This document shows positions 40,746 to 54,666 of a stretch of 64,000 nt of DNA, in pieces (the stretch's first letter is position 1; each line of letters starts with the position of its first letter). The notes beneath the pieces are model-generated. The model was not told where the DNA came from, searched no databases, and saw only the letters and a list, made by a program, of their open reading frames with translations. Position numbers and translations under genes: made by a program. Source of the DNA: Macrostomum lignano (taxonomy: Eukaryota). The stretch lies in contig NIVC01001166.1 in NCBI GenBank assembly GCA_002269645.1, positions 1 through 64,000 of the forward strand, read 5' to 3'.

Positions 40746-41585
40746 ATGAGCGCCGGCGGCAGCGGTAGCGCCTACGCTCAGGTGAAGCCCGGCCGATTGC
40801 GCCTAAAATCGGACAAACTGTCGGCCAGCGGCAGCTCCTCGGACAAGCAAAAAAAGCAGAAGAAGCACAAGCGAAAACGGCGACATGACGAGTCGGAGGG
40901 CGGCGGCGCCAAGGACGCCGCGGACACGGCCAGCCATGGCGGCTGGTGGGCGGTCTCGACCATTGAGGAGGCCACGGGCAGCCTGGCTATCGAGCTGGAG
41001 CCGCACTCGTACGCTCTAGCACTGGACAATGGCCGGTTCGCAGTCGGTCCGGCCCACCCGCCAGGCGAGGGCCCCTCGCCCGAGGAGATTCTGGTGGCGA
41101 TGCGGCTGCCAGACGGCCGGCTGGGCTTGAAGTCCGGCTACGGCAAGTTCCTCGGCCTGGACTCAAACGGTGACCGGCTTGTTGGCTTGGCTGACGCCAT
41201 GGGGCCGCGGGAGCTGTGGCAGCCGGTGTTTCAGGACGGCCGCACCGCCCTGCTGGGCGCCAACGGCTGCTTTCTCGGCCTGCACGACGAAATCGGCCTG
41301 GCCTGCCGCAGCCAACGAGTCACCGGCGACTCCGACACCGTCACTCTGCGCTGCAACGCCAATCTGGACGTGGATCCCAAGCTGCGTCTGGCGCCCGAGG
41401 AGCGCCAAGGTGTTGCGCAGGCCGAGGTTAATTACGCTAAAAAATTTCAGAGCTGGCAGGACGGCAAGCTGCGGCTTTCCAAGGGGGACAAGGCCGACCT
41501 GAAGCGGGCTAAGAAGGACGGCAGCCTGCACGAGACCATGCTGGACAGGCGGGAGAAGCAGAAGTCTGACAAGTTCTGCAAGTGA
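40746..41585 (+). CDS. FRG1: FRG1 (FSHD region gene 1) fascin-like nucleolar/spliceosomal protein, intronless
   Basis: AYAQVKPGRLRLK, HGGWW, YALALDNGRF, PSPEEIL, LKSGYGKFLG, DAMGPRELWQPVFQDGRTALLGANGCFL, KKFQSWQD, DGSLHETMLDRREKQKSDKFCK*. Confidence 0.95.
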   Translation: MSAGGSGSAYAQVKPGRLRLKSDKLSASGSSSDKQKKQKKHKRKRRHDESEGGGAKDAADTASHGGWWAVSTIEEATGSLAIELEPHSYALALDNGRFAVGPAHPPGEGPSPEEILVAMRLPDGRLGLKSGYGKFLGLDSNGDRLVGLADAMGPRELWQPVFQDGRTALLGANGCFLGLHDEIGLACRSQRVTGDSDTVTLRCNANLDVDPKLRLAPEERQGVAQAEVNYAKKFQSWQDGKLRLSKGDKADLKRAKKDGSLHETMLDRREKQKSDKFCK

Positions 41586-41675: not shown

Positions 41676-42451
41676 TATCTTTACTAATTCTGTTTGAACA
41701 GGAATACTTAGAAAATTGATATCAGTGTAAATTATTGTTTAGGGAGATAAAGGATACAATTCCTATTGTTTCACTTCTTCACTTCTTCATTCACCAAGCA
41801 GCGTTGTTTTTATTAACTTTTCTTTCCGTCATTGCTACTACCGTTAGTAGTGTAAGTAATAATGCTAAACTTTAATCTAATCTGGCATTTCTGAATGTCT
41901 GAATCGACTATTGCCTATTGTTGCATTGGTTCAAATGTAATGTAAGCCGGTATATATTGTATGACCAATTCTATGCAGTAAACTTTATTTATTTGCTTTG
42001 TGACTGCCTTTAATTTCGAACTTTATATACTCCGCAATCCGCAAGTTCTTTTGTTTTTAAGAAACTGTAAAAAGTATTGTGCGTTAAATAAACAATTTTA
42101 AGGACGTGTTCCTATATGGGACTTTGCTGCCTTCGCTGGGGCTGGCGGACACACTGAAGCCTTTGTCATTTTAACATTGTCCAAATATTTGCTTGATAGA
42201 TTTAGTCTAATCCCTGCATCTGGTGCCGTGCATTTGGATTTCCGAATTCCTCTTTGGGTAGCCTTCTTTGATTTCTGTCCCGATGTTTGCGCTCCCCTAG
42301 TCTAATCCCCTGACCTTCTCGAGGGGGGCTTCTGCAAACATGGACTTATCGATCTGAGTGTCCGGATTGAAGACCACTATTTCTTCATCATTACAAAGCC
42401 TGTAGCTGTGTTTTTGTTATGGTTTTTCAAGTTGAATTAGAAGTCTCGGCG

Positions 42452-43440
42452 CTAAGGCACTAAGACTAAGGCACTAAGGCACTAAGATACTAAGATACTA
42501 AGGCACTAAGATACTAAGATACTAAGGCACTAAGATACTAAGATACTAAGGCACTAAGATACAAGATACAAAGACACTAAGACACTAAGACACTAAGATA
42601 CTAAGGCACCAAGATACTAAGGCACTAAAACACTAAGGCACTAAGACACTAAGACACTAAGACACTAAGACACTGAGACACTAAGACACTAAGACACTAA
42701 GATACTAAGGCACTAAGATACTCGTACTAAGGCACTAAGACACTAAGGCACTAATGCACTAAGATACTAAGGCACTAAGACACTAAGACACTAAGACACT
42801 AAGACACTAAGATACTAAGGCACTAAGATACTCGTACTAAGGCACTAAGACACTAAGGCACTAATGCACTAAGATACTAAGGCACTAAGACACTAAGACA
42901 CTAAGACACTAAGACACTAAGATACTAAGGCACTAAGATACTCGTACTAAGGCACTAAGACACTAAGGCACTAATGCACTAAGATACTAAGGCACTAAGA
43001 TACTAAGGCACTAAGATACTAAGACACTAAGACACTAAGACACTAAGGCACTAAGATACTAAGGCACTAAGACACTAAGGCACCAAGATACTAAGGCACC
43101 AAGATACTAAGGCACCAAGATACTAAGGCACCAAGATACTAAGGCACCAAGATACTAAGGCACCAAGATACTAAGGCACCAAGATACTAAGGCACCAAGA
43201 TACTAATGCACTAAGATACTAAGGCACTAAGATACTAAGGCACTAAGATACTAAGACACTAAGACACTAAGACACTAAGGCACTAAGATACTAAGGCACT
43301 AAGACACTAAGGCACCAAGATACTAAGGCACCAAGATACTAAGGCACCAAGATACTAAGGCACCAAGATACTAAGGCACTAAGAAACTAAGACACTAAGA
43401 CACTAAGACACTATGACGCCAAGGCATGAAGGCACTAAAA
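42452..43440. repeat. 9-bp satellite
   Basis: (ACTAAGGC/ACTAAGAC/ACTAAGAT)n with 120-bp higher-order blocks near 42720-42960. Confidence 0.95.
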
Positions 43441-44231: not shown

Positions 44232-47200
44232 ATGGGTAAGATATGCCATTTGTTCTTATGCTCGTATTTATAACTCAACAACCAAAGCAGCTGGGAACTT
44301 AGTACTTCAGAAGAAGCCAGCCAGACTATTCACAATACTCCTTTCTCGTCTTGGCACTGTAAGATTGGGGCGAAGCTAGACCAACTAGCTTAGGAAATTT
44401 GGGTTGCTGGAATCTGCCTTCGCTTTGATTCTCCACCAGTGTTAAATGTCGCATGGGCCGCCAGAGAAAAGAGAGAGACAGGGGCCTGTGCCTGCGTGTC
44501 AGCTGTTATTGAACATCCCCGACACGCTGACTAATAGTCTGTGTCCGGCTAAGTATAAAATTTCTAAGCCCTTGCCCTGTTGCGGTGTTTCTTTTCCTAA
44601 AGCAAACGCCCAGTCTCGGCTAGCTGACTGTTCCTTGTTTTCAATCGGCAATTCTTCCCGCAGCTGTAGTCGCGGCAATGCAGACCCCGCTGCGCCGTTC
44701 GTCCAGCCTCTCAACTGAGGACGTGCGCAAATTTCGAGACGAGAACGAGCGAAAATCGCGCGAAATCCAGTCGGCCAACGCGTGCGAGACTGTATTTGAA
44801 ATTCTGAAAGATCGCAACCGAAATCGTGTGTCGATCAGTCGGATTCTGAGCACCATCGAGGGCGCCGGGATCCAGCTGACCGACCCCAGGCTCAAGGAAT
44901 GCATTCGCAACATTCAGAATCTGCAGAAGCGCAGCATCAAATCTGAGGACGACGCCAAGAACTCGTTTTTCCTTGACAAGAAGACCTTCACCGAGGTAGT
45001 ACGCGACAATGTGATCATGCTGCTGACTATCCTGCAGAACGACTTTGTCATACCGGAGTTCCACGAGTTCACGCACCACATTAAAGCCATCTTTGAGAAC
45101 TGCCGCGACAATCGGGAAGGCGCGCCGGCCAGTTACATCCCTCAGCTGGCCCGCTTCGATCCCAACTACTGGGCCGTGTCCATCTGCACCATTGACGGCC
45201 AGCGGTTCAACTGCGGCGACTATCATGTGCCGTTCTGTCTGCAGTCGACTAGCAAGCCGTTGAATTACGCCATCGCGCTCACCGAGCTCGGCTGCGACGA
45301 GGTGCACAAGTCGGTTGGCTACGAGCCGTCCGGCATCAGCTTCAATTCTATCGCTCTGAACGACAACAAGCGACCGCATAATCCCATGGTTAATAGCGGA
45401 TCGATTATCATCTGCAGCTTGATTAGACGGATGGAACATCTGGCAGATAGATTCGATTATGTTATGCAGGTTAGGCCGATGAGACTATTGATTCTTTACT
45501 AAGCCAAGTCTTTGTTTGATTTTGTTCACTTAATAGTCTTTGTTTAGCTTTTTCGCCTTGACGTGTACACTAATCCTTCTACTTATATGAGTAGTCTTTG
45601 TTTGGCTTGTGTGTACTACTTCTACTTATATGAGTAGTCTTTGTTTGGCTTGTGTGTACTACTTCTACTTATATGAGTAGTCTTTGTTTGGCTTGTGTGT
45701 ACTACTTCTACTTATATGAGTAGTCTTTGTTTGGCTTGTGTGTACTACTTCTACTTATATGAGTAGTCTTTGTTTGGCTTGTGTGTACTACTTCTACTTA
45801 TATGAGTAGTCTTTGTTTGGCTTGTGTGTACTACTTCTACTTATATGAGTAGTCTTTGTTTGGCTTGTGTGTACTACCTCTACTTATATGAGTAGTCTTT
45901 GTTTGGCTTGTGTGTACTACTTCTACTTATATGAGTAGTCTTTGTTTGGCTTGTGTGTACTACTTCTACTTATATGAGTAGTCTTTGTTTGGCTTGTGTG
46001 TACTACTTCTACTTATATGAGTAGTCTTTGTTTGGCTTGTGTGTACTACTTCTACTTATATGAGTAGTCTTTGTTTGGCTTGTGTGTACTACTTCTACTT
46101 ATATGAGTAGTCTTTGTTTGGCTTGTGTGTACTACTTCTACTTATATGAGTAGTCTTTGTTTGGTTAGTCGTGTGCACTACTCCTGCCTATATGAGTAGT
46201 CTTTGTTTGGTTAGTCGTGTGCGCTATTCTTTATATCTCGTATGTGAATTCTTTGTTTTGTGTTTTAATGTCTGTTCCATCCATCTTTGTATTTCTGTTT
46301 GGATTCTCCTGTTTGCATCTAAATTTTCTTGGCCTAGTCTTTATCCAAGAGATCAGCCATCATTTATCCCCCCCCGCCGCAGGAGTACAAGCGCATGGCC
46401 GGCAACGAATACCTGGGCTTCAACAATCCCACATTTCTATCGGAACGCGAAACCGCGGACAGGAACTTCGCCCTGGCCTACTACATGAAGGAGAACGGCT
46501 GCTTCCCGCCAGGCACCAATCTGAAGGAGACTCTGGACTTCTACTTTCAGCTCTGCTCAGTCGAGGTCAACTGCGAATCAGCCGCCGTCATTGCCGGCAC
46601 TCTTGCTAATGGAGGCATCTGCCCGCTCACTGGCGAGCCGGTGCTGTCCCCGGAGGCCGTCCGGGACACTCTGTCCCTCATGCACAGCTGTGGCATGTAC
46701 GACTACAGCGGCCAATTCGCTTTCAAGTGCGGCCTGCCGGCCAAGTCAGGCGTGTCCGGCGTGATCCTACTGGTCATCCCCAACCTCATGGGCATCGCGC
46801 TCTGGTCTCCGCCGCTGGATAAGCAGGGCAACTCCTGCCGGGGCATCCAGTTCTGCAAGGAGCTGGTAGCCAAGTTCAACTTTCACAATTACGATTCGTT
46901 AATTTACACCCAGGATAAGCTGGACCCGAGGCGGGCCCACGTGGAGACTCAGAGTAGCGAAGTTGTGTCCATTCTGTTCTCCGCCTCCAACAATGACATC
47001 ACGGCGCTTAGGTAAGTATTTTTGTTGTCCTTTAGGTACGGTCCTTTTCGTCTGGGCCGCCATCAAACCCTCCTGAGGTCCTTGCAGTCTTTCTGGGCCG
47101 CCATCAAACCCTCCAGAGGTCCTTTCAGTCAGTCTGGGCCGCCATCAAGCCCTCCTGAGGTCCTTTCAGTCTTTCTGGGCCGCCATCAAACCCTCCTGAG

Positions 47201-48495
47201 GTCCTTTCAGTCTTTCTGGGCCGCCATCAAACCCTCCTGAGGTCCTTGCAGTCTTTCTGGGCCGCCATCAAACCCTCCAGAGGTCCTTTCAGTCAGTCTG
47301 GGCCGCCATCAAGCCCTCCTGAGGTCCTTTCAGTCTTTCTGGGCCGCCATCAAACCCTCCTGAGGTCCTTTCAGTCTTTCTGGGCCGCCATCAAACCCTC
47401 CTGAGGTCCTTGCAGTCTTTCTGGGCCGCCATCAAACCCTCCTGAGGTCCTTTCAGTCTTTCTGGGCCGCCATCAAACCCTCCTGAGGTCCTTTCAGTCT
47501 TTCTGGGCCGCCATCAAACCCTCCTGAGGTCCTTTCAGTCTTTCTGGGCCGCCATCAAACCCTCCTGAGGTCCTTTCAGTCTTTCTGGGCCGCCATCAAA
47601 CCCTCCTGAGGTCCTTGCAGTCTTTCTGGGCCGCCATCAAACCCTCCTGAGGTCCTTTCAGTCTTTCTGGGCCGCCATCAAACCCTCCTGAGGTCCTTTC
47701 AGTCTTTCTGGGCCGCCATCAAACCCTCCTGAGGTCCTTTCAGTCTTTCTGGGCCGCCATCAAACCCTCCTGAGGTCCTTGCAGTCTTTCTGGGCCGCCA
47801 TCAAACCCTCCTGAGGTCCTTTCAGTCTTTCTGGGCCGCCATCAAACCCTCCTGAGGTCCTTGCAGTCTTTCTGGGCCGCCATCAAACCCTCCCGAGGTC
47901 CTTTCAGTCTTTCTGGGCCGCCATCAAACCCTCCTGAGGTCCTTTCAGTCCGTCTGGGCCGCCGCCGCTGGCCCCCTTTTTGTCCTTCAGTTGATCCAGA
48001 ATCTTCACATTGAAAAGCAGGCCTCAGAATCCATGAGCTCTCATTACTTTTACCCCCCCCCCCTCACCCGTCCGCAGGCGAGTATTCCTCCAGGGGGTCA
48101 ACATGAACCAGGCCGACTACGACGGTCGAACCGCTCTGCACGTAGCTGCCGCCGAGGGCCACCTGGAGGTTGTCACCTTCCTAGTTGACACCTGCGAGGT
48201 CGGCATCAACCCAAAGGATCGCTGGGGCTTCACGCCTCTAGCGGAGGCCGAGCGATTTCACCACCTGCCGGTGGCGCAGTTTCTCAAATCAGTCGGCGGC
48301 CAGATCAGCGCCAGCCCGGCCGACCTGCCCCAGACAGATCTGCGCACCAAGAAGATGTCAATCAAGGAGAGCGCCCACGAGGACGTGCCCGCGTCAGTGT
48401 CTTTTTCGGCGTCGACGTCGTCAGCTTCGACGTCGGCTCCGACAGCCGCTTTGGACGCGCCGACAACGTCGGCTGAAACTTCAAAGAAAGCTTAA
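44232..48495 (+). CDS. GLS: Glutaminase with C-terminal ankyrin repeats; exons 44232-44235, 44664-45469, 46383-47011, 48078-48495
   Basis: ASYIPQLAR, catalytic [12 protein letters not shown] (SxxK), [60 protein letters not shown], and ankyrin [25 protein letters not shown] 4-nt first coding exon (ATG G) splices in frame to give [10 protein letters not shown]. Confidence 0.95.
45570..46215. repeat. 43-bp minisatellite in glutaminase intron 2
   Basis: AGTAGTCTTTGTTTGGCTTGTGTGTACTACTTCTACTTATATG, nearly identical copies. Confidence 0.95.
47045..47965. repeat. 41-bp minisatellite in glutaminase intron 3
   Basis: CTGGGCCGCCATCAAACCCTCCTGAGGTCCTTTCAGTCTTT units. Confidence 0.95.
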
Positions 48496-48504
48496 GCCGG
48501 CCCA

Positions 48505-48972
48505 TGACGTCATCGCACGCAGCTTGTAACGTTTTTTTGAGTCGAGTGGTTTTACAGTAGCAATACCGCATGTTAGTGCCACCCTCGCCACTAAATTTTA
48601 ATGACGTCACCTAATGCGATTGCGTCACAATTTAAAAGGACATCACACCGTGCGATGACGTCACTATCACCTATTGGGATGACGTCATCATGACGTTGAC
48701 TAAAGCAATTATGTCAGAATTCTAGTGGCGTCATCTGCTATTGAACGCCCTAGTGAACGCGCTGCTATTAGATGACATAACAAAATGTATCATGACGTCA
48801 TCTTATGGCGATTGAATCATTATGTATAGTGATATCACCTCATTAGCCTGATCTTGCGATTTTAATAACTTCAAAGTGTTGCAGATGACGTCATTATTAA
48901 AACGATAATGACGGTAGTAAACGCTGTATACTATAATATTTTTAAAGCTAATTTTAGTCATTGGTGACGTCA
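48505..48972. promoter_or_regulatory. Cluster of seven perfect CRE palindromes (TGACGTCA) directly after the glutaminase stop
   Basis: Sites at 48505, 48602, 48656, 48680, 48793, 48886 and 48965. Confidence 0.55.
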
Positions 48973-50504
48973 TTTTATATACCTACTCACAGGGTACTAG
49001 TACGATTTTTCATACTCTTGGTTTGTTATAACTAGCATAAATAGCATTGGTTTGTTATAACTAGTTAGCATTAACTGCTGTCAATATTGCCTAGTTAGTC
49101 AGAATTCAATATTTTATTTCAGAATTTCTCCTTCTTCACCTCCTTGCAGTTGACCTTGGTATTGCTTGAACAGTCCTACTGACCATTAATTATCATATTT
49201 TATCTCACGTTGAGAATCTTCTATTTCCTTTTTAAAATATTCATTGGGTATAATTCTCATTAATACCTGTCATTATTTTATTTATTGAATCTTACCCATA
49301 CAATATTCAAACTAGCTACTTATCCATTTTATATAAGTAGTTTTCTAGTATTTTTTAGCTTGATTTATTTGGTTGAATTATGAATAATATAATAATCTCT
49401 CCCGTCAGACACCTGGTTAGTAGCAGCTCTATCTGCCTATGTCAGTCTTTGAATGCAATATACGCAGCATGTTTCATTGGTTTAATAAACTAAGATAATA
49501 ATAATTAAAATAATCTAAGATAATAATTTGCATTCTTGTCAATTGCCTGTCTGCTTTTTGGACTTTGATTTTGGTCCAATGTGTCAGTCAAATATTGTTT
49601 CTAAGCTGATCTAAAAAACTCTAGGATTATAGGGGCTAATCTCCTTATCTCCTTAGTTGATCCTCAGATCGCGTGCGTTTCTTGCTCAGGTAAGCATAGT
49701 CTGGCTTTGCGAGTTTCGTTAGACTGATTGGCAGGTAGATTGGTTGTTAAAACGCATTTTTGCCAGATTGTTACAGTTAGCTTTGGTAGATTGTTAAAAA
49801 CTAATCTGGTAGAATGTTTAACTGGATTAGTAGATTATTAAATGAATTTGGTAGATTGCTAAATTGCGGTATGTTTTCTTCTAAATTTATCATTCAATTA
49901 TTTTATAGAATAAAGTTTTCTTATAAAGTTTTTTGTTCGATCTGTATATAAGTATTCTTAACGTAATTGCATAGAGTCTGGTCTTTTGTTGCAACAGTTT
50001 TCTTTACACTACATTGCGAAGCTTTTGTAGTACTACTAAAATTTTAATATGAATCAAGTCAAGTTTCAGTTGGTTTTTTACTGCAATTGCTTTCTCCATT
50101 TTTTGAATATAACTCGCCGAATAGATTACCAGTTGAATGGCTTTATATGAAATATAAAGCATTCGATTCGACGAGTTAAATTCAATTTGAGCTTTTTATC
50201 CAATGGCTTTATACACTGAGTAGTATGCAGTGCACATTTAAATTAATTTTTCTATGCACTTATGGTCTCATTGGTTCGTTCTTTTATCTTTAAATCAATT
50301 TTTGCATAGTTCTTACAACACTACTTCTCATTATAAAATAGATAACTCTGGACTGAAAAAAATTTATCGTGCCTAATTGATTTATTAATGAAAATTCAAG
50401 TATAAACCTCGTAGTTTGATTCCCATTTTTAATCAGCAAAAAAAAGAAATTTGTCACGTGACTTTCTTATTTCATGCTATCGCGTTTTAATCCTATTCAG
50501 TTAA

Positions 50505-50995
50505 AGGGATGCAGGTAGGTTTCAGCCAATGAGCGTCCACCTAGGGGTTTGAAGGAGTAGTCCAGTTCAGTTAGAGGGGTGCAGCTAGGCTCCAGCCAAT
50601 GAGCGTCCAGCTAGGGGTTAGAAGGAGTAGTCCAGTTCAGTTAGAGGGGTGCAGCTAGGCTTCAGCCAATGAGCGTCCACCTAGGGGTTAGAAGGAGTAG
50701 TCCAGTTCAGTTAGAGCGGTGCAGCTAGGCTTCAGCCAATGAGCGTCCACCTAGGGGTTTGAAGGAGTAGTCCAGTTCAGTTAGAGGGGTGCAGCTAGGC
50801 TTCAGCCAATGAGCGTCCACCTAGGGGTTTGAAGGAGTAGTCCAGTTCAGTTAGAGCGGTGCAGCTAGGCTTCAGCCAATGAGCGTCCATCTAGGGGTTA
50901 AAAGGAGTAGCCAGTTCAGTTAGAGGGGTGCAGCTAGGCTCCAGCCAATGAGCGTCCAGCTAGGGGTTAGAAGTGGTAAGCTTCCAGTTCTAGTT
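50505..50995. repeat. 70-bp tandem repeat x7, each unit with AGCCAATGAG (NF-Y consensus), ~200 bp upstream of PELP1
   Basis: Motif at 50524, 50594, 50664, 50734, 50804, 50874 and 50943. Confidence 0.92.
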
Positions 50996-51189
50996 AGAGG
51001 TCGGAAGGCGGCAAGCTTGCTCCAGAACCCAGTTAATAAGCTTCCAGCTGAGAGTAAAAGTGGGAACACTGAGCGGCTGAGCCTAATGAAGATTTGCAGC
51101 TATTTTAACGCTTGTCTGCGCTTTAGTAGAGTAGCGTCAGAAATTAATTTAAAAAATCTATCAACGACCCTCCCCCTTCCGTATTGCAG

Positions 51190-53250
51190 GCGGCCGCCGC
51201 GCAGGATTTGCACAGACGCGTCGTTGCACTTGACGACGCCGGCCTGGCGCGCGATGGTCCCGCGCTCTGCCAACAGCTGGCTAAGCTTTTAGCTCCGCCT
51301 GGCGCGAAATATCGCCGCCAAATTAGCAAAGCTACTACTATTAGTAGCGCTAGTAATAATATTGATAAAAATTCTGCTCTGCCGCACGCCTGCGCAGCCG
51401 CTGCCCGCCTGCTGTGCCGAGCGGCCGCCCAGCCTGGCCTGGCCCGGGATCTGGCCGCCTCCGCTGCCTCCCTGCCTCGCCTTGTCGACCACCTGGCAGC
51501 CAGGATTCGATCCTCGTCGACTAATTTCGCCGAAATTCTCTGGCTGGCCCCGGCGATGGAGTGCGCGATTCAGCGGTTCCCCGCCCAGTGCGGCCACGTT
51601 CGCGGCCGCCTCGAGGGCGCCCTGATCCGCCTGTTGGACCTTCAGCCGCGGCTTGACGATGCCGGGGCTGCCGAAGTCGCCGCCGTCTCTGCGGCTGCCG
51701 AGAGGCTGTGGTCGCTGCTGCCAAAGCTCGGCAGCTTGTCGGCCGAAGATCGAGCCACCCGATGGTCGGAGCTTCACGCCAGGTGTCTTGACGCTCTGGA
51801 CTCTTGCCTGCGGAGGATGGCGGACTGCGCCGGCGGTAGCGGCTTTGTTGGCGAAGACTCCGGCCAGCAGCAGCATGCATCGCTGGTCCCCCCTTCGGCG
51901 TCAGCTGCCGGCCTTCTGGCGGGTCTGCCGCCGATTCTCGCCGATTCGGCCGGCGTCCGAGCCTGCGTCCGGCGCGCCGCCGGCCTGCTGGCTGCCGTCC
52001 GGGCGCTGCTCGACTGTCCGGCCCAGCTGACCGTTGCTGCCGACGTTGGCGCCGCCGCCGACCTGGCCGAACGGCTGGTTTCTATGAGGCCGTCGGCCGC
52101 TACTAGCGAGGCTCGTTGCCTAGCAACCGAACTTCCCTCAGCTCAGGTTGAAGCAAATCGACTATTGAGCCGCCTAGCCGGGATGCTGGGCCTCGGCGCG
52201 TGCCTCATCAGTCCGCAACTGGCTGGCGCGTTGCACGCCAGCTTGGAAGCGCCGATGTCTGGGCCGCTGCGGCTGGCGGCCTATGAGCTTCTGGCCGCCT
52301 GGCTGGACAGCGGCCGCTCCGTGGCCGGCCTCGCCCTGCTGCCCGGCGGCGGACTTCGCGGCCTCGTTCAGTGCCGTCTCGTGCCGGACGCCGCCGCTGC
52401 CGTTCTGGCCCGGCCGGACGTTGAACTTGTCCAGCTTGTTGACGTTGACGTTCTTGACCGGCGTCGGAGCTGCGGAGCGGCGGCGCTGCGCTGCCTCGCC
52501 CGCTTAGTTGAAGACTTCCGCCCGGAGCCGGCCGTGGCCCGCCTGCTGTGGCGCCGGCTGGCCGGTCCGCTTGCCGGCCGCCTGGTGTCCGGGGCCCGTC
52601 CGGCTCCGACAGCCGACCTGGCCGAATCTGTGGCCGAGTTTCTATCCGCCCTTGGCCGATGCCCGCTGCCCTGCCGTCCCTGGCCAGTGGAGCTGCTGGC
52701 GCTGGCTTTGAGACGCCTGGGCGGAGCTGCCGCCAGGCGGCCGCTGGACGGCCTGCGCGACCGCCTGAGCGTCTGGGCGAGTCCGCCGCTCTGGACTGAC
52801 GGCGCGACAGAGGAGACGGTCGGCCCGCCGGTCGGAGCTGACGACGGTGAGATTGATGAGGAAGCCACGGCAGAGGCTGGATCTCGGCCTCATCCGCAGC
52901 CGCTGCCACCGCTGCCCCAGGAGAAACCCGTTGAAGAAGAGGCAGCAGCAGCTCAAAGCGACACCGAAGATGACGATGAGGATGACAGGCCGCCGCCGGC
53001 TAAGATTGCTCGACTGTCCGTCTCGGCTGATGAAGGAGAATCTAACGAGGACACTGAAGCTGAGGATGAAGCTGAGGCTGACGAAGATGAAGCGTTTTTA
53101 ACCGCCGACAGTCAGGTGGACTCGCAGCAGGAGACGCAGCGGGCTGCAGCAACAGACGGCTCTGCTGGCGGCGTTGAGTTGCAGTCAGTCAAGCCGGAGG
53201 GAGGGCCGAGCGTTATGGAAATGCTAGACAGCTTTGTCGATAACGACTGA
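51190..53250 (+). CDS. PELP1: PELP1/Rix1 rixosome subunit; single long exon starting at a splice acceptor with no cognate ATG
   Basis: LLCRAAAQPGLARDL...LPRLVDHL...AMECAIQRFPAQCGHVRGRLEGALIRLLD resembles recalled PELP1 LLRYAAQLPALFRDI..LPGLLTSL..GMKACMTYFPRACGSLKGKLASFFL. Pro/Glu-rich tail; C-terminal EMLDSFVD matches AMLADFID. Confidence 0.82.
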   Translation, partial: AAAAQDLHRRVVALDDAGLARDGPALCQQLAKLLAPPGAKYRRQISKATTISSASNNIDKNSALPHACAAAARLLCRAAAQPGLARDLAASAASLPRLVDHLAARIRSSSTNFAEILWLAPAMECAIQRFPAQCGHVRGRLEGALIRLLDLQPRLDDAGAAEVAAVSAAAERLWSLLPKLGSLSAEDRATRWSELHARCLDALDSCLRRMADCAGGSGFVGEDSGQQQHASLVPPSASAAGLLAGLPPILADSAGVRACVRRAAGLLAAVRALLDCPAQLTVAADVGAAADLAERLVSMRPSAATSEARCLATELPSAQVEANRLLSRLAGMLGLGACLISPQLAGALHASLEAPMSGPLRLAAYELLAAWLDSGRSVAGLALLPGGGLRGLVQCRLVPDAAAAVLARPDVELVQLVDVDVLDRRRSCGAAALRCLARLVEDFRPEPAVARLLWRRLAGPLAGRLVSGARPAPTADLAESVAEFLSALGRCPLPCRPWPVELLALALRRLGGAAARRPLDGLRDRLSVWASPPLWTDGATEETVGPPVGADDGEIDEEATAEAGSRPHPQPLPPLPQEKPVEEEAAAAQSDTEDDDEDDRPPPAKIARLSVSADEGESNEDTEAEDEAEADEDEAFLTADSQVDSQQETQRAAATDGSAGGVELQSVKPEGGPSVMEMLDSFVDND

Positions 53251-53369: not shown

Positions 53370-54140
53370 TTTCTTAGAATCGCCCTGAAATGCCCCTCTA
53401 GAATCGGTGCGAAATACCCCTCTAGAATCAGTCCAAAATACCCCTCTAGAATCGGTCCAAAACACCCCTCTTGAATTGGTGCAAAATACCCCTCTAGAAT
53501 CAGTCCAAAATACCCCTCTAGAATCAGTCCAAAATACCCCTCTAGAATCGGTCCAAAACACCCCTCTTGAATTGGTGCAAAATACCCCTCTAGAATCAGT
53601 CCAAAATACCCCTCTAGAATCAGTCCAAAATACCCCTCAAAATCGGTTCAAAATACCCCTCTAATATCGGTCCAAAATACCCCTGTAGAATCGGTTCAAA
53701 ATACCCCTCTAGAATCGATGCAAAATACCCCTCTAGAACCGGTCCAAAATACCCCTCAAAATCGGTTCAAAATACTCTATAATCGTCCGAAATATCCCTC
53801 TGAATGGTGTTCAAATTTCCCCTCTTAAGTTGTCCCAAAATATCCTCTAGAATTGTTCAAAATTCTTCTCTATAATTGTCCCAGGATACCCCTCTAGAAT
53901 CGCCTCAAAAATACCCCTTTACAATGGCCTCAAAAATACCCGTCTACAATCGCCTCAAAAATACCCATCTACAATCGCCTCAAAAATACCCGTCTACAAT
54001 GGCCTAAAAAATACCCCTCTACAATCGCCTCAAAAGTACCCATCTTCAATGGCCTAAAAATACCCCTCTACAATCGCCTCAAAAATACCCCTCTACAATC
54101 GCCTCAAAAATACCCCTCTACAATCACCTCAAAAATACCA
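53370..54140. repeat. ~22-bp minisatellite between PELP1 and TCHP
   Basis: AAAATACCCCTCTAGAATCGGTCC, drifting to AAAATACCCCTCTACAATCGCCTC. Confidence 0.92.
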
Positions 54141-54475
54141 CTTTGGAATCGCCCTTAAAGCAGGGAAATTCAGTCTTTATCACCCGGAAAAGCAGAAAAG
54201 AAGTCTGCTAAACAATAATTCGTCGCGTCTCTTCATTTGCTACTAATCTGTCAAGCCGGTAGTATAATTTGATTGTTAGCTTAATTTGTGTGTTATCAAA
54301 AAGTACAAATGGAAAATATGCCAATCTCACGCATTTCTGAGTAACCTTTCTGAGTCTGGTATTTTTGCTTTATTTTTCTTTAAAATTGCTTCCTAGCTTC
54401 TAGTCAAAATCTTACTAAATTCTAATTTTAGTTGTATTAACTGCAAAATTTGTCCTTCCACCATATATTTCTGTC

Positions 54476-54666
54476 ATGGCATTGCCGCACCTAAAAGTTC
54501 GCTATTCTACTTCCAAAGCCGTGTACGAGGACGCTATGGCGAGGCGTCGAGCCGCCGAGGACCAAAATAGGCAGGCCTGGGGCCAGGCGGTCAACTATTT
54601 CCATGCCAATGAGGTTCGAGCCACCAAACAGGCTCAGTGGACTTCCGATCGGGCTTTTCAGGACAG
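54476..54666 (+). CDS. TCHP: Trichoplein-like protein, first exon only; later exons not found in the window
   Basis: MALPHL...ARRRAAEDQNRQAWGQAVNYFHANEVRATKQAQWTS resembles recalled human MALPTL...[36 protein letters not shown]; donor CAG|GTAAAC at 54666/54667. Confidence 0.8.

What the first reader, a model, noticed from the sequence alone, without database searches (positions are those of the whole stretch)
51160..51260. PELP1 has no ATG of its own: the ORF starts at a phase-0 acceptor, so the spliced-leader AUG may be the initiator
Seen: CCCCCTTCCGTATTGCAG|GCG GCC GCC GCG CAG GAT opens a 687-codon frame whose first Met lies well inside the conserved domain. I found no upstream exon with a compatible phase between glutaminase and this site. 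Established: flatworm spliced leaders end in AUG, and in Schistosoma this AUG can initiate translation. Inference: SL-AUG gives MAAAAQDL..., making this essential 60S-biogenesis gene strictly dependent on trans-splicing.
Basis: partly seen in the sequence, partly recalled or inferred. Interest (0 to 1): 0.7.

Follow-up and report, generated by a model that had tools for sequence, protein, structure and literature searches.

The report
Start-codon-less PELP1-like gene at trans-splice site
In this copy of a flatworm (Macrostomum lignano) ribosome-assembly-type gene the reading frame starts at a splice acceptor with no ATG, so the AUG at the end of the worm's spliced leader most likely starts the protein. 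This mechanism is already known in flatworms, and two sister copies of the gene carry a genomic ATG at exactly that spot.

Summary
The window is Macrostomum lignano scaffold NIVC01001166.1, bases 1-64000. The sequence observation holds. TTGCAG|GCG at 51189|51190 opens a 686-codon frame. There is an in-frame TAA at 51145, no ATG before the exon, and the first in-frame ATG is codon 123.

The site fits the published M. lignano trans-splice acceptor motif [T/C]TNCAG. The species' single spliced leader ends in ATG. The public gene model starts as "partial" exactly at 51190. Spliced-leader AUG initiation, giving MAAAAQDL..., is therefore the best reading (about 0.6). No read-level evidence could be obtained.

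- A phase-compatible upstream micro-exon exists at 49668-49689 with donor CAG|GTAAGC. A UniProt glutaminase fusion model uses it, but it supplies no ATG.
- "Strict dependence on trans-splicing" is not supported. Two other copies in the same assembly read TTCATG|GCG: a genomic ATG at the same codon and no AG. This could be real, or an artefact of RNA-seq polishing of the assembly.

PELP1 identity is probable but weakly supported (hhalign E 5e-5; Pfam RIX1 below cut-off). The mechanism has been known since 2006, so this is a new example. The AG/ATG difference between copies is the more interesting lead.

The parts
51165..51189 (+). Pyrimidine-rich tract (18 of 25 bases) ending in TTGCAG: candidate spliced-leader trans-splice acceptor, splice point 51189|51190
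   Evidence: Read directly. Matches the M. lignano trans-splice acceptor motif [T/C]TNCAG (PMC8629364). The public CDS starts at the next base.
51190..53250 (+). Intronless ORF of 686 codons plus stop, a divergent PELP1/RIX1-like protein, with no initiator ATG in this copy
   Evidence: identical to an annotated 'partial' 686-aa protein of GCA_002269645.1. Pfam RIX1 E 0.004, 17.3 bits, below the 27.4-bit cut-off. hhalign against 15 vertebrate PELP1 gives E 5e-5, probability 68%. The C-terminus MLDSFVDND resembles vertebrate MLADFVDCPPDD.
51145..51147 (+). In-frame TAA upstream of the acceptor; no ATG between it and 51190
   Evidence: translation...SSVRN*FKKSINDPPPSVLQAAAAQDL.
51254..51292 (+). 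First ATG on the exon if no leader AUG is present: out of frame, 12-codon ORF
51556..51558 (+). First in-frame ATG (codon 123), inside the conserved MECAIQRFPAQCG motif
50496..51000 (+). 70-bp tandem repeat, 7.2 units, each with a CCAAT box (CAGCCAATGAGCG): candidate promoter, which would leave a short outron
   Evidence: In the sister copies the array ends about 25 nt before the ATG. The promoter role is inferred.
49668..49689 (+). 22-nt micro-exon with consensus donor (gctcag|GTAAGC) that joins 51190 in phase 0; used in the UniProt glutaminase-fusion model; carries no ATG
50509..50514 (+). ATGCAG|GTAGGT: the only ATG-bearing phase-0 donor candidate of fair quality close to the gene (it would give MQ+AAAA...); no evidence that it is used
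48505..48972 (.). Cluster of seven TGACGTCA (CRE-type) palindromes just after the glutaminase stop codon: possible upstream regulatory region
   Evidence: 9 in the window against 0.58 expected, 7 of them here.

Best explanation
The window copy of the M. lignano PELP1-like gene is transcribed from a promoter a few hundred bases upstream, probably the CCAAT-box repeat array. Its outron is removed by spliced-leader trans-splicing at TTGCAG|G (51189|51190). The 35-nt leader ends in ...UUGCAUG, which puts its AUG directly in front of GCG GCC GCC GCG. That AUG is then the first AUG of the mRNA and initiates MAAAAQDLHRR....

Shown: the sequence anatomy, the frame, the lack of a genomic AUG, the fit to the acceptor motif, the leader sequence, and the annotated 5' end.

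Inferred: that the leader is actually joined at this site in this copy, and that ribosomes start on its AUG.

The gene family as a whole is not dependent on this. Two sister copies in the assembly encode the same N-terminus with a genomic ATG that replaces the acceptor.
For: 1. Organism and leader. The ORF is 99-100% identical to M. lignano proteins. The spliced leader (SL) is CGGTCTCTTACTGCGAAGACTCAATTTATTGCATG, and 30-39% of genes are trans-spliced.

2. Acceptor. TTGCAG fits [T/C]TNCAG, and 18 of the 25 preceding bases are pyrimidines.

3. Need for an external AUG. There is an in-frame TAA at 51145, and no ATG until an out-of-frame one at 51254 and the in-frame codon 123. Codons 1-122 look coding by GC pattern and absence of stops, and the Pfam RIX1 alignment covers aa 23-150.

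4. Annotation.
- Mlig_3_7 gene 5' ends are cut at peaks of SL-trimmed reads by the TBONE pipeline.
- The deposited CDS starts, as 'partial', exactly at 51190.
- The neighbouring glutaminase model likewise starts 2 nt after an acceptor, cccgcag|ct, at 44664.

5. Sister copies L001 and L002 have ATG at -3..-1 of the same codon series, giving MAAAAQDL. The protein therefore does start there. If that ATG is instead a by-product of RNA-seq polishing, it would itself be a trace of ...CATG|GCGGCC junction reads.

6. Precedent. In S. mansoni the SL AUG is in frame in 28% of trans-spliced mRNAs, and more than 40 cDNAs need it (Cheng et al. 2006).
Against: - No SL-junction read, cDNA, ribosome footprint or peptide was available. 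The annotated start is indirect evidence.
- Annotated 5' ends in this assembly are not always at acceptors. L001 starts right after a genomic ATG, L002 starts 9 nt later, and the L002 downstream gene starts right after its ATG.
- RNA-seq reads were mapped allowing up to 1000 locations, so the copy of origin of any SL reads is unknown.
- A consensus donor 1.5 kb upstream (49690) could pair with this acceptor in cis if transcription starts further upstream.
- Differences between the copies are 5 non-synonymous to 1 synonymous. This copy could therefore be drifting without constraint.
Confidence: 0.6

Rival explanations
1. The window copy is a start-less, poorly or not translated duplicate in a neopolyploid genome. 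The working copies are the ATG-bearing paralogues. The annotated start at 51190 only reflects transcripts or reads from other copies projected onto this one.
For: - Two other copies have a genomic ATG at that codon.
- Reads were multi-mapped.
- Three of the four window-specific coding changes are non-synonymous.
- Without a leader AUG, the first AUG is an out-of-frame 12-codon ORF.
Against: - The ORF is intact over 686 codons.
- The change that removes the ATG creates a consensus trans-splice acceptor behind a pyrimidine tract rather than random damage.
- ATG-type copies have no AG there. A transcript 5' end lying exactly after that position is therefore hard to derive from them. It is easy to derive from SL-trimmed reads of an AG-type copy.
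- The ML2-based UniProt model also needs an AG at this junction.
Confidence: 0.15
2. The acceptor at 51190 is used in cis. An upstream exon is spliced to it: either the 49668-49689 micro-exon, as a non-coding leader or as part of a glutaminase fusion as in UniProt A0A1I8I2H9, or an ATG-bearing mini-exon such as ATGCAG|GTAGGT at 50509.
For: - All four splice sites of the fusion model are canonical in the window and reproduce its junction peptide exactly.
- The donor gctcag|GTAAGC is a perfect consensus.
- Flatworm acceptors are often shared between cis- and trans-splicing. The glutaminase acceptor at 44664 is itself used both ways.
- A CRE cluster at 48505-48972 could be an upstream promoter.
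Against: - The micro-exon has no ATG, and an in-frame TAG lies just upstream. It gives full-length protein only as an implausible glutaminase fusion that uses a weak internal donor (gacaac|GTCGGC).
- The evidence-based Mlig_3_7 annotation keeps the two genes apart and shows no upstream exon.
- 47 ATG..GT candidates arise from sequence alone.
- The sister copies lack the acceptor altogether yet keep the ORF.
Confidence: 0.1
3. The difference between copies is an assembly artefact, so all copies are really alike. Either the CATG of L001/L002 is a polishing error at a true CAG acceptor, which would strengthen the spliced-leader AUG reading. Or the window's CAG is wrong and the gene has its own ATG, in which case the finding disappears.
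For: - Mlig_3_7 was polished with Pilon using RNA-seq as well as DNA reads.
- The leader ends in ...CATG and acceptors end in ...CAG.
- 5 of the 6 bases at which L001/L002 differ from the window equal the leader base (P = 0.018).
- The ML2-based UniProt model has an L002-type protein but an intron ending right before GCGGCC.
- The downstream gene shows the same pyrimidine tract followed by tcATG|G.
Against: - Six clustered differences plus a net 109-nt length difference just upstream separate the two types. L001 and L002 agree with each other exactly.
- Bases -5 to -9 were not converted to leader sequence.
- The glutaminase acceptor is CAG in all three copies, so there is no systematic CAG-to-CATG conversion.
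- Standard RNA-seq aligners would soft-clip the leader rather than call an insertion (my inference).
Confidence: 0.12

Closest known systems
[quoted passage not shown]
   Same: - The leader ends in AUG.
- The acceptor lies inside the open frame.
- The leader AUG is in frame with no stop after it.
- No genomic AUG is available upstream of conserved coding sequence.
   Different: - The species is a free-living macrostomorphan. I found no paper on leader-AUG use in M. lignano.
- Nothing was measured experimentally here.
- Paralogous copies in the same genome encode the AUG genomically at the same codon.
PELP1 / Rix1 family (Pfam PF08167 RIX1 and PF08166 NUC202; scaffold of the Rix1 60S-maturation complex)
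   Same: - A weak RIX1-domain match (aa 23-150).
- A collinear profile match to vertebrate PELP1 residues 198-443, including the FPxxCGxxRGxL and YxxLxxW motifs.
- An acidic C-terminal tail ending in ML..FVD.
- An N-terminus MAAA(A), as in vertebrate PELP1.
   Different: - It is much shorter (687 aa against about 1000-1130 aa).
- About 50-75 N-terminal residues of the vertebrate domain have no counterpart.
- The Pfam score is below the curated cut-off, and there is no NUC202 hit.
- phmmer finds no relative in 1.84 billion representatives or in the PDB.
- The gene is intronless and has about 70% GC.
Outron-type (non-operon) spliced-leader trans-splicing in M. lignano (Ustyantsev & Berezikov 2021)
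   Same: An acceptor of type [T/C]TNCAG with no paired donor nearby. The gene is of a conserved type, the class reported as enriched among trans-spliced genes.
   Different: The distance to the upstream gene is 2.7 kb (about 2.2 kb after removing the tandem repeat), above the paper's 1-kb operon threshold. The gene therefore does not look like a downstream operon gene. With the next gene downstream, however, it could form an operon (1.2 kb, of which 0.76 kb is tandem repeat).

Membership tests
Spliced-leader-AUG-initiated ORF (flatworm type) | The organism trans-splices a leader whose last three bases are AUG | tested here: met
   The window is M. lignano. The leader ends in ...TTGCATG (PMC8629364; PMC5173321).
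Spliced-leader-AUG-initiated ORF (flatworm type) | A trans-splice acceptor at the 5' edge of the ORF (sequence level) | tested here: met
   TTGCAG| fits [T/C]TNCAG and follows a tract with 18 of 25 pyrimidines.
Spliced-leader-AUG-initiated ORF (flatworm type) | Leader-to-exon junction observed in RNA at this site | tested here: inconclusive
   Only indirect evidence. The deposited partial CDS starts exactly at 51190, in an annotation whose 5' ends are cut at SL-read peaks. Other copies show starts that are not at an AG. No reads were accessible, and the supplements held nothing on this gene.
Spliced-leader-AUG-initiated ORF (flatworm type) | Leader AUG in frame with the ORF, with no stop between | tested here: met
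   ATG|GCG GCC GCC GCG CAG GAT: zero bases lie between the AUG and codon 1.
Spliced-leader-AUG-initiated ORF (flatworm type) | No genomic AUG able to give the full-length protein | tested here: met
   Met for this copy: TAA at 51145, and the first in-frame ATG is codon 123. Not met for sister copies L001 and L002, which read TTCATG|GCG.
Spliced-leader-AUG-initiated ORF (flatworm type) | Ribosomes initiate on the leader AUG | not testable with these tools
   This needs ribosome profiling, N-terminal proteomics or a reporter assay.
PELP1 / Rix1 family | N-terminal RIX1 domain (PF08167) above the curated threshold | tested here: inconclusive
   17.3 bits against a cut-off of 27.4; E 0.004; aa 23-150 match profile positions 84-187 of 193.
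PELP1 / Rix1 family | PELP1 middle domain (PF08166, NUC202) | tested here: inconclusive
   No Pfam hit at E <= 0.1. A profile of 15 vertebrate PELP1 does align residues 198-443 to aa 122-375 (E 5e-5, probability 68-70%).
PELP1 / Rix1 family | Acidic C-terminal tail with a conserved terminal ML.DFVD motif | tested here: met
   The window protein ends ...VMEMLDSFVDND after a D/E-rich tail. In vertebrates M1097 L1098 A1099 D1100 F1101 ... D1107 are nearly invariant.
PELP1 / Rix1 family | Detectable by direct sequence search, or solved-structure or fold match | tested here: not met
   phmmer against 1.84 billion representatives found only the protein itself. There was no PELP1 hit in the PDB. The AlphaFold single-sequence model has mean pLDDT 47.8, too poor for a fold search.
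Downstream gene of an M. lignano operon | Repeat-adjusted distance to the upstream same-strand gene below 1 kb | tested here: not met
   From the glutaminase stop at 48495 to 51190 is 2.7 kb. Only 505 bp of that is tandem repeat. Threshold taken. RepeatMasker content was not assessed.

The most novel reading that the evidence does not exclude
Very young paralogues in a neopolyploid flatworm supply the same initiator methionine in two interchangeable ways. One copy uses a trans-splice acceptor plus the leader's AUG. Two copies use a genomic ATG that replaces the acceptor.

The two states differ by a tight cluster of 6 changes in 13 nt. Five of those six ATG-type bases equal the leader sequence. 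That would fit conversion by a leader-bearing cDNA. It would also fit the simple route CAG -> CATG, which is available because leaders end in ...CATG and acceptors in ...CAG.

If real, this would be a live example of how genes enter or leave dependence on the spliced-leader AUG.
Probability: 0.3. Interest if true: 0.6.

Novelty: new member of a known kind. Interest (0 to 1): 0.4.

Why it matters
If confirmed, this is a clear case in a free-living, transgenesis-capable flatworm in which a conserved-type gene copy can only make full-length protein through the spliced leader's AUG.

There are two practical consequences:
- Such genes are deposited as 'partial' or are fused to neighbours, as in UniProt A0A1I8I2H9. 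Annotation pipelines for flatworms should add the leader AUG.
- Reporter constructs that lack the acceptor would be silent.

The AG/ATG dimorphism among near-identical copies, if real, offers a natural experiment on how the leader AUG and genomic AUGs replace one another. If it is instead a polishing artefact, it is a warning about using RNA-seq to polish genomes of trans-splicing organisms.

Tried and rejected
- **Direct homology searches.** The word-index search found only M. lignano copies. Exhaustive phmmer over 1.84 billion representatives found only the protein itself. PDB phmmer gave no PELP1 hit.
- **Searches with PELP1 as query.** No flatworm or other invertebrate orthologue turned up, so orthologous N-termini and acceptors could not be compared.
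- **Structure.** The AlphaFold2 single-sequence model had mean pLDDT 47.8. No fold search was run because matches would be meaningless.
- **Transcript evidence.** The protein cluster has no transcript-derived or Logan member. The exact look-up of the UniProt fusion model found no contig. Paper supplements held nothing for Mlig019673 or PELP1. Full-text searches for the gene found nothing. The Wasik 2015 paper is not held.
- **Retrogene idea.** The idea was an intronless ORF carrying a leader remnant. There is no copy of the leader's last 20 nt in the window at up to 3 mismatches. Only the last 9 or so bases before the ORF resemble the leader, and I saw no poly(A) remnant after the stop. The idea is kept only as a weak lead.
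- **Systematic CAG-to-CATG polishing artefact.** The glutaminase acceptor is CAG in all three copies, so it is not systematic. It cannot be excluded for this particular site.
- **Bacterial-style TTG start at 51184**. Rejected: the organism is a eukaryote.
- **Rfam scan of the window.** No matches.
Full report
**What the window is.**
The ORF at 51190-53247 is 99-100% identical to Macrostomum lignano proteins annotated 'hypothetical protein BOX15_Mlig019673g6/g3, partial'. An exact look-up places the gene at 51190-53250 of NIVC01001166.1 in assembly GCA_002269645.1 (Mlig_3_7). Window coordinates therefore equal scaffold coordinates. The same-strand neighbours are:
- FRG1, 40746-41585;
- glutaminase, CDS 44666-48495;
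- this gene;
- a 512-aa gene starting at 54476.

**Checking the observation.**
- The sequence reads CGACCCTCCCCCTTCCGTATTGCAG|GCGGCCGCCGCGCAGGAT, with the boundary at 51189|51190.
- In the ORF frame there is a TAA at 51145-51147, then FKKSINDPPPSVLQ, then AAAAQDL....
- No ATG lies between that stop and the boundary.
- The frame runs for 686 codons to a TGA at 53248-53250.
- The first ATG of any frame on the exon is at 51254. It is out of frame and opens a 12-codon ORF.
- The first in-frame ATG is codon 123 at 51556.
- Codons 1-122 have no stop in frame 0, against 11 stops in frame 2. Their codon-position GC pattern (0.71/0.58/0.60) is of the same kind as in the rest of the ORF (0.79/0.55/0.70). 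The upstream DNA does not show this pattern.

The core observation is therefore correct.

**Is it PELP1?**
The evidence is thin but consistent.
- Pfam gives only RIX1 (PF08167) at E 0.004 and 17.3 bits, below the 27.4-bit cut-off. It covers aa 23-150 against profile positions 84-187.
- Exhaustive phmmer over 1.84 billion representative proteins finds nothing but the protein itself. The PDB gives no PELP1 hit.
- A profile of 15 vertebrate PELP1 proteins aligns residues 198-443 to aa 122-375 with E 5e-5 and probability 68%. The alignment includes FPAQCGHVRGRL against FPRACGSLRGKL, and YELLAAWL against YAVLELWV.
- The protein ends in an acidic tail and ...MLDSFVDND. This resembles the near-invariant vertebrate C-terminus MLADFVDCPPDD.
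- The AlphaFold single-sequence model is too poor to use (mean pLDDT 47.8).

I treat the protein as a probable, highly divergent and shortened PELP1 orthologue (about 0.75). A relaxed alignment suggests that roughly 50-75 N-terminal residues of the vertebrate domain have no counterpart. This might hint at a missing 5' exon, but vertebrate PELP1 also starts MAAA(A/V), like M+AAAA here.

**Trans-splicing context.**
- M. lignano has one 35-nt spliced leader (SL), CGGTCTCTTACTGCGAAGACTCAATTTATTGCATG.
- 30-39% of its genes are trans-spliced.
- The top motif at trans-splice acceptors is [T/C]TNCAG (PMC8629364; PMC5730564).
- TTGCAG at 51184-51189 fits that motif, behind a tract with 18 of 25 pyrimidines.
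- Joining the leader at 51189|51190 gives ...UUGCAUG|GCGGCC. The AUG is in frame with nothing in between, predicting MAAAAQDL....
- The use of the flatworm leader AUG as initiator is established. In S. mansoni it is in frame in 28% of trans-spliced mRNAs and required by more than 40 cDNAs (Cheng et al. 2006, as summarised in PMC9851317). All flatworm leaders end in AUG (PMC12582326).

**Indirect transcript evidence.**
In Mlig_3_7 the 5' ends of trans-spliced genes were set by the TBONE pipeline at peaks of leader-trimmed reads. ORFs were then called with TransDecoder.
- The deposited model for this gene is 5'-partial and starts at exactly 51190.
- The glutaminase model starts at 44666, two bases after an acceptor (ttcttcccgcag|ct). 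That is what one expects if the transcript begins at 44664 and the CDS at the first full codon.
- The glutaminase acceptor is also used in cis from an exon near 27.3 kb in another model (P0005). This agrees with the reported sharing of acceptors between cis- and trans-splicing in flatworms.

This is good circumstantial support for a leader junction at 51190, but it is not read-level proof.

**The upstream-exon claim.**
UniProt A0A1I8I2H9, named 'glutaminase' (1297 aa, from the older ML2 assembly), fuses glutaminase to this ORF through ...DAPTTS-RAFLAQ-AAAAQDL.
- Splicing the window at 48467|49668 and 49689|51190 reproduces that peptide exactly.
- All four sites are GT..AG. The second donor, gctcag|GTAAGC, is a perfect consensus.
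- It has no ATG, and an in-frame TAG lies at 49654. It could yield full-length protein only as a fusion that uses a weak donor inside the last glutaminase exon.
- A blind scan finds 47 ATG..GT phase-0 candidates in 48499-51189. Only two have fair donors, notably ATGCAG|GTAGGT at 50509-50514.
- The evidence-based annotation uses none of these candidates.

**The unexpected result: sister copies.**
Two further copies are in the same assembly. L001 is on NIVC01000838.1. L002 is an inverted duplicate on the same scaffold at 196-218 kb.
- Their CDS differs from the window at only 4-6 of 2061 bases: 5 non-synonymous and 1 synonymous change in all.
- The upstream non-coding DNA is 98.6% (L001) and 94.6% (L002) identical to the window.
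- The 13 bases before the ORF carry six differences. The window reads CCCCCTTCCGTATTGCAG|GCGG; L001 and L002 read CCCCCTCTTGTATTCATG|GCGG.
- That clustering has P <= 3e-7 at the local divergence rate.
- The sister copies thus have a genomic ATG at precisely the codon where the leader AUG would sit, and no AG acceptor.
- The window is also a net 109 nt longer between the CCAAT repeat array and the start.

Two consequences follow. First, MAAAAQDL is very probably the true N-terminus. Second, the gene as a family is not 'strictly dependent on trans-splicing'.

**A caveat on the assembly.**
Mlig_3_7 was polished with Pilon using RNA-seq as well as DNA reads. Leaders end in ...CATG and acceptors in ...CAG.

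Points that favour a polishing error at the sister copies:
- Five of the six L001/L002-specific bases equal the leader base at that position (P = 0.018).
- The ML2-derived UniProt model has an L002-type protein yet needs an AG before GCGGCC.
- The downstream gene shows the same look, a pyrimidine tract followed by tcATG|G. In L002 it is annotated from the base after the ATG.

Points against:
- L001 and L002 agree with each other exactly.
- Bases -5 to -9 are not leader-like.
- The glutaminase acceptor is an unaltered CAG in all three copies.

I give an artefact of either direction about 0.12. If the sister ATGs are artefacts, they would themselves be traces of ...CATG|GCGGCC junction reads. 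The leader-AUG reading would then be stronger, and 'strict dependence' would again be possible.

**Likely mechanism.**
Transcription probably starts downstream of the 49690 donor. The likely promoter is the 70-bp tandem array at 50496-51000, whose 7.2 units each carry a CCAAT box, CAGCCAATGAGCG. That leaves an unpaired acceptor, which is the condition for leader addition. The leader is joined at 51190, and its AUG, the first on the mRNA, starts translation. The promoter assignment, the junction and the initiation step are all inferred.

If transcription starts further upstream, for example near the cluster of seven TGACGTCA palindromes at 48505-48972, the 49690 donor could capture the acceptor in cis. 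That mRNA would have no in-frame AUG before codon 123.

**Novelty and score.**
Leader-AUG initiation is a known flatworm mechanism. I found no paper that examines it in M. lignano, so this is a new member of a known kind. The AG/ATG dimorphism among near-identical paralogues is the more novel lead. It is either a natural toggle between leader-supplied and genome-encoded initiators or a polishing artefact worth knowing about.

- Interest: 0.4.
- Confidence in the leader-AUG reading for this copy: 0.6.

Noticed in passing
window 48505-48972: Seven perfect TGACGTCA (CRE/ATF-type) palindromes lie within 470 bp, right after the glutaminase stop codon. The whole 64-kb window has nine, against 0.58 expected. 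This may be a regulatory region or a repeat family.
   Followed up: partly
window 50496-51000: A 70-bp tandem repeat of 7.2 units, each with a consensus CCAAT box (CAGCCAATGAGCG), lies directly upstream of the PELP1-like gene. In the sister copies the array ends about 25 nt before the ATG. It is a candidate promoter.
   Followed up: partly
window 44640-44680 and 27266: The glutaminase acceptor ttcttcccgcag|CT at 44663|44664 appears to serve two uses. One deposited model starts there, as expected for leader trans-splicing. Another model (P0005) cis-splices to it from an exon about 17 kb upstream. Here the leader AUG would be out of frame (AUG CUG UAG), and the real ATG is at 44678.
   Followed up: partly
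window 54440-54480; L002 13150-13190: The ATG of the downstream 512-aa gene sits at the end of a pyrimidine tract (tttgtccttccaccatatatttctgtcATG|G) that would be a perfect acceptor without the T. In L002 one c-to-a change makes the 12 nt ending in that ATG (atttatgtcATG) match the leader's last 12 at 10 positions, and the deposited CDS there starts right after the ATG (511 aa, partial).
   Followed up: partly
UniProt A0A1I8I2H9 / A0A1I8HV90 (P0007, P0006) against window 44666-53250: The 1297-aa UniProt 'glutaminase' is a fusion model of glutaminase and the PELP1-like ORF, joined through a 22-nt micro-exon. The 90% protein cluster therefore mixes two unrelated proteins under the name glutaminase.
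   Followed up: yes
NIVC01001166.1: window 40-58 kb and about 196-218 kb (L002, reversed); NIVC01000838.1 (L001): The whole FRG1-glutaminase-PELP1-like-512-aa block is present three times in the assembly, once as an inverted duplicate on the same scaffold. The copies differ mainly in tandem-repeat lengths. Coding differences in the PELP1-like gene are 5 non-synonymous to 1 synonymous.
   Followed up: partly
window 53388-54151, 47051-47963, 42450-43440: Long tandem arrays (24-bp x32; 41-bp x22; and a third, 42450-43440, inferred only from staggered self-similar BLAST hits, period and copy number not measured) fill much of the space between and within these genes. The 24-bp array accounts for most of the 1.2 kb between the PELP1-like gene and the next gene. 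After repeat subtraction that pair would fall under the published 1-kb operon threshold.
   Followed up: no
window 51190-53250: The PELP1-like CDS is intronless, has about 70% GC and 19% alanine, and sits in flanks of 30-40% GC. No relative was detectable by direct search in 1.84 billion proteins, which suggests an unusually fast-evolving version of a normally conserved gene.
   Followed up: partly
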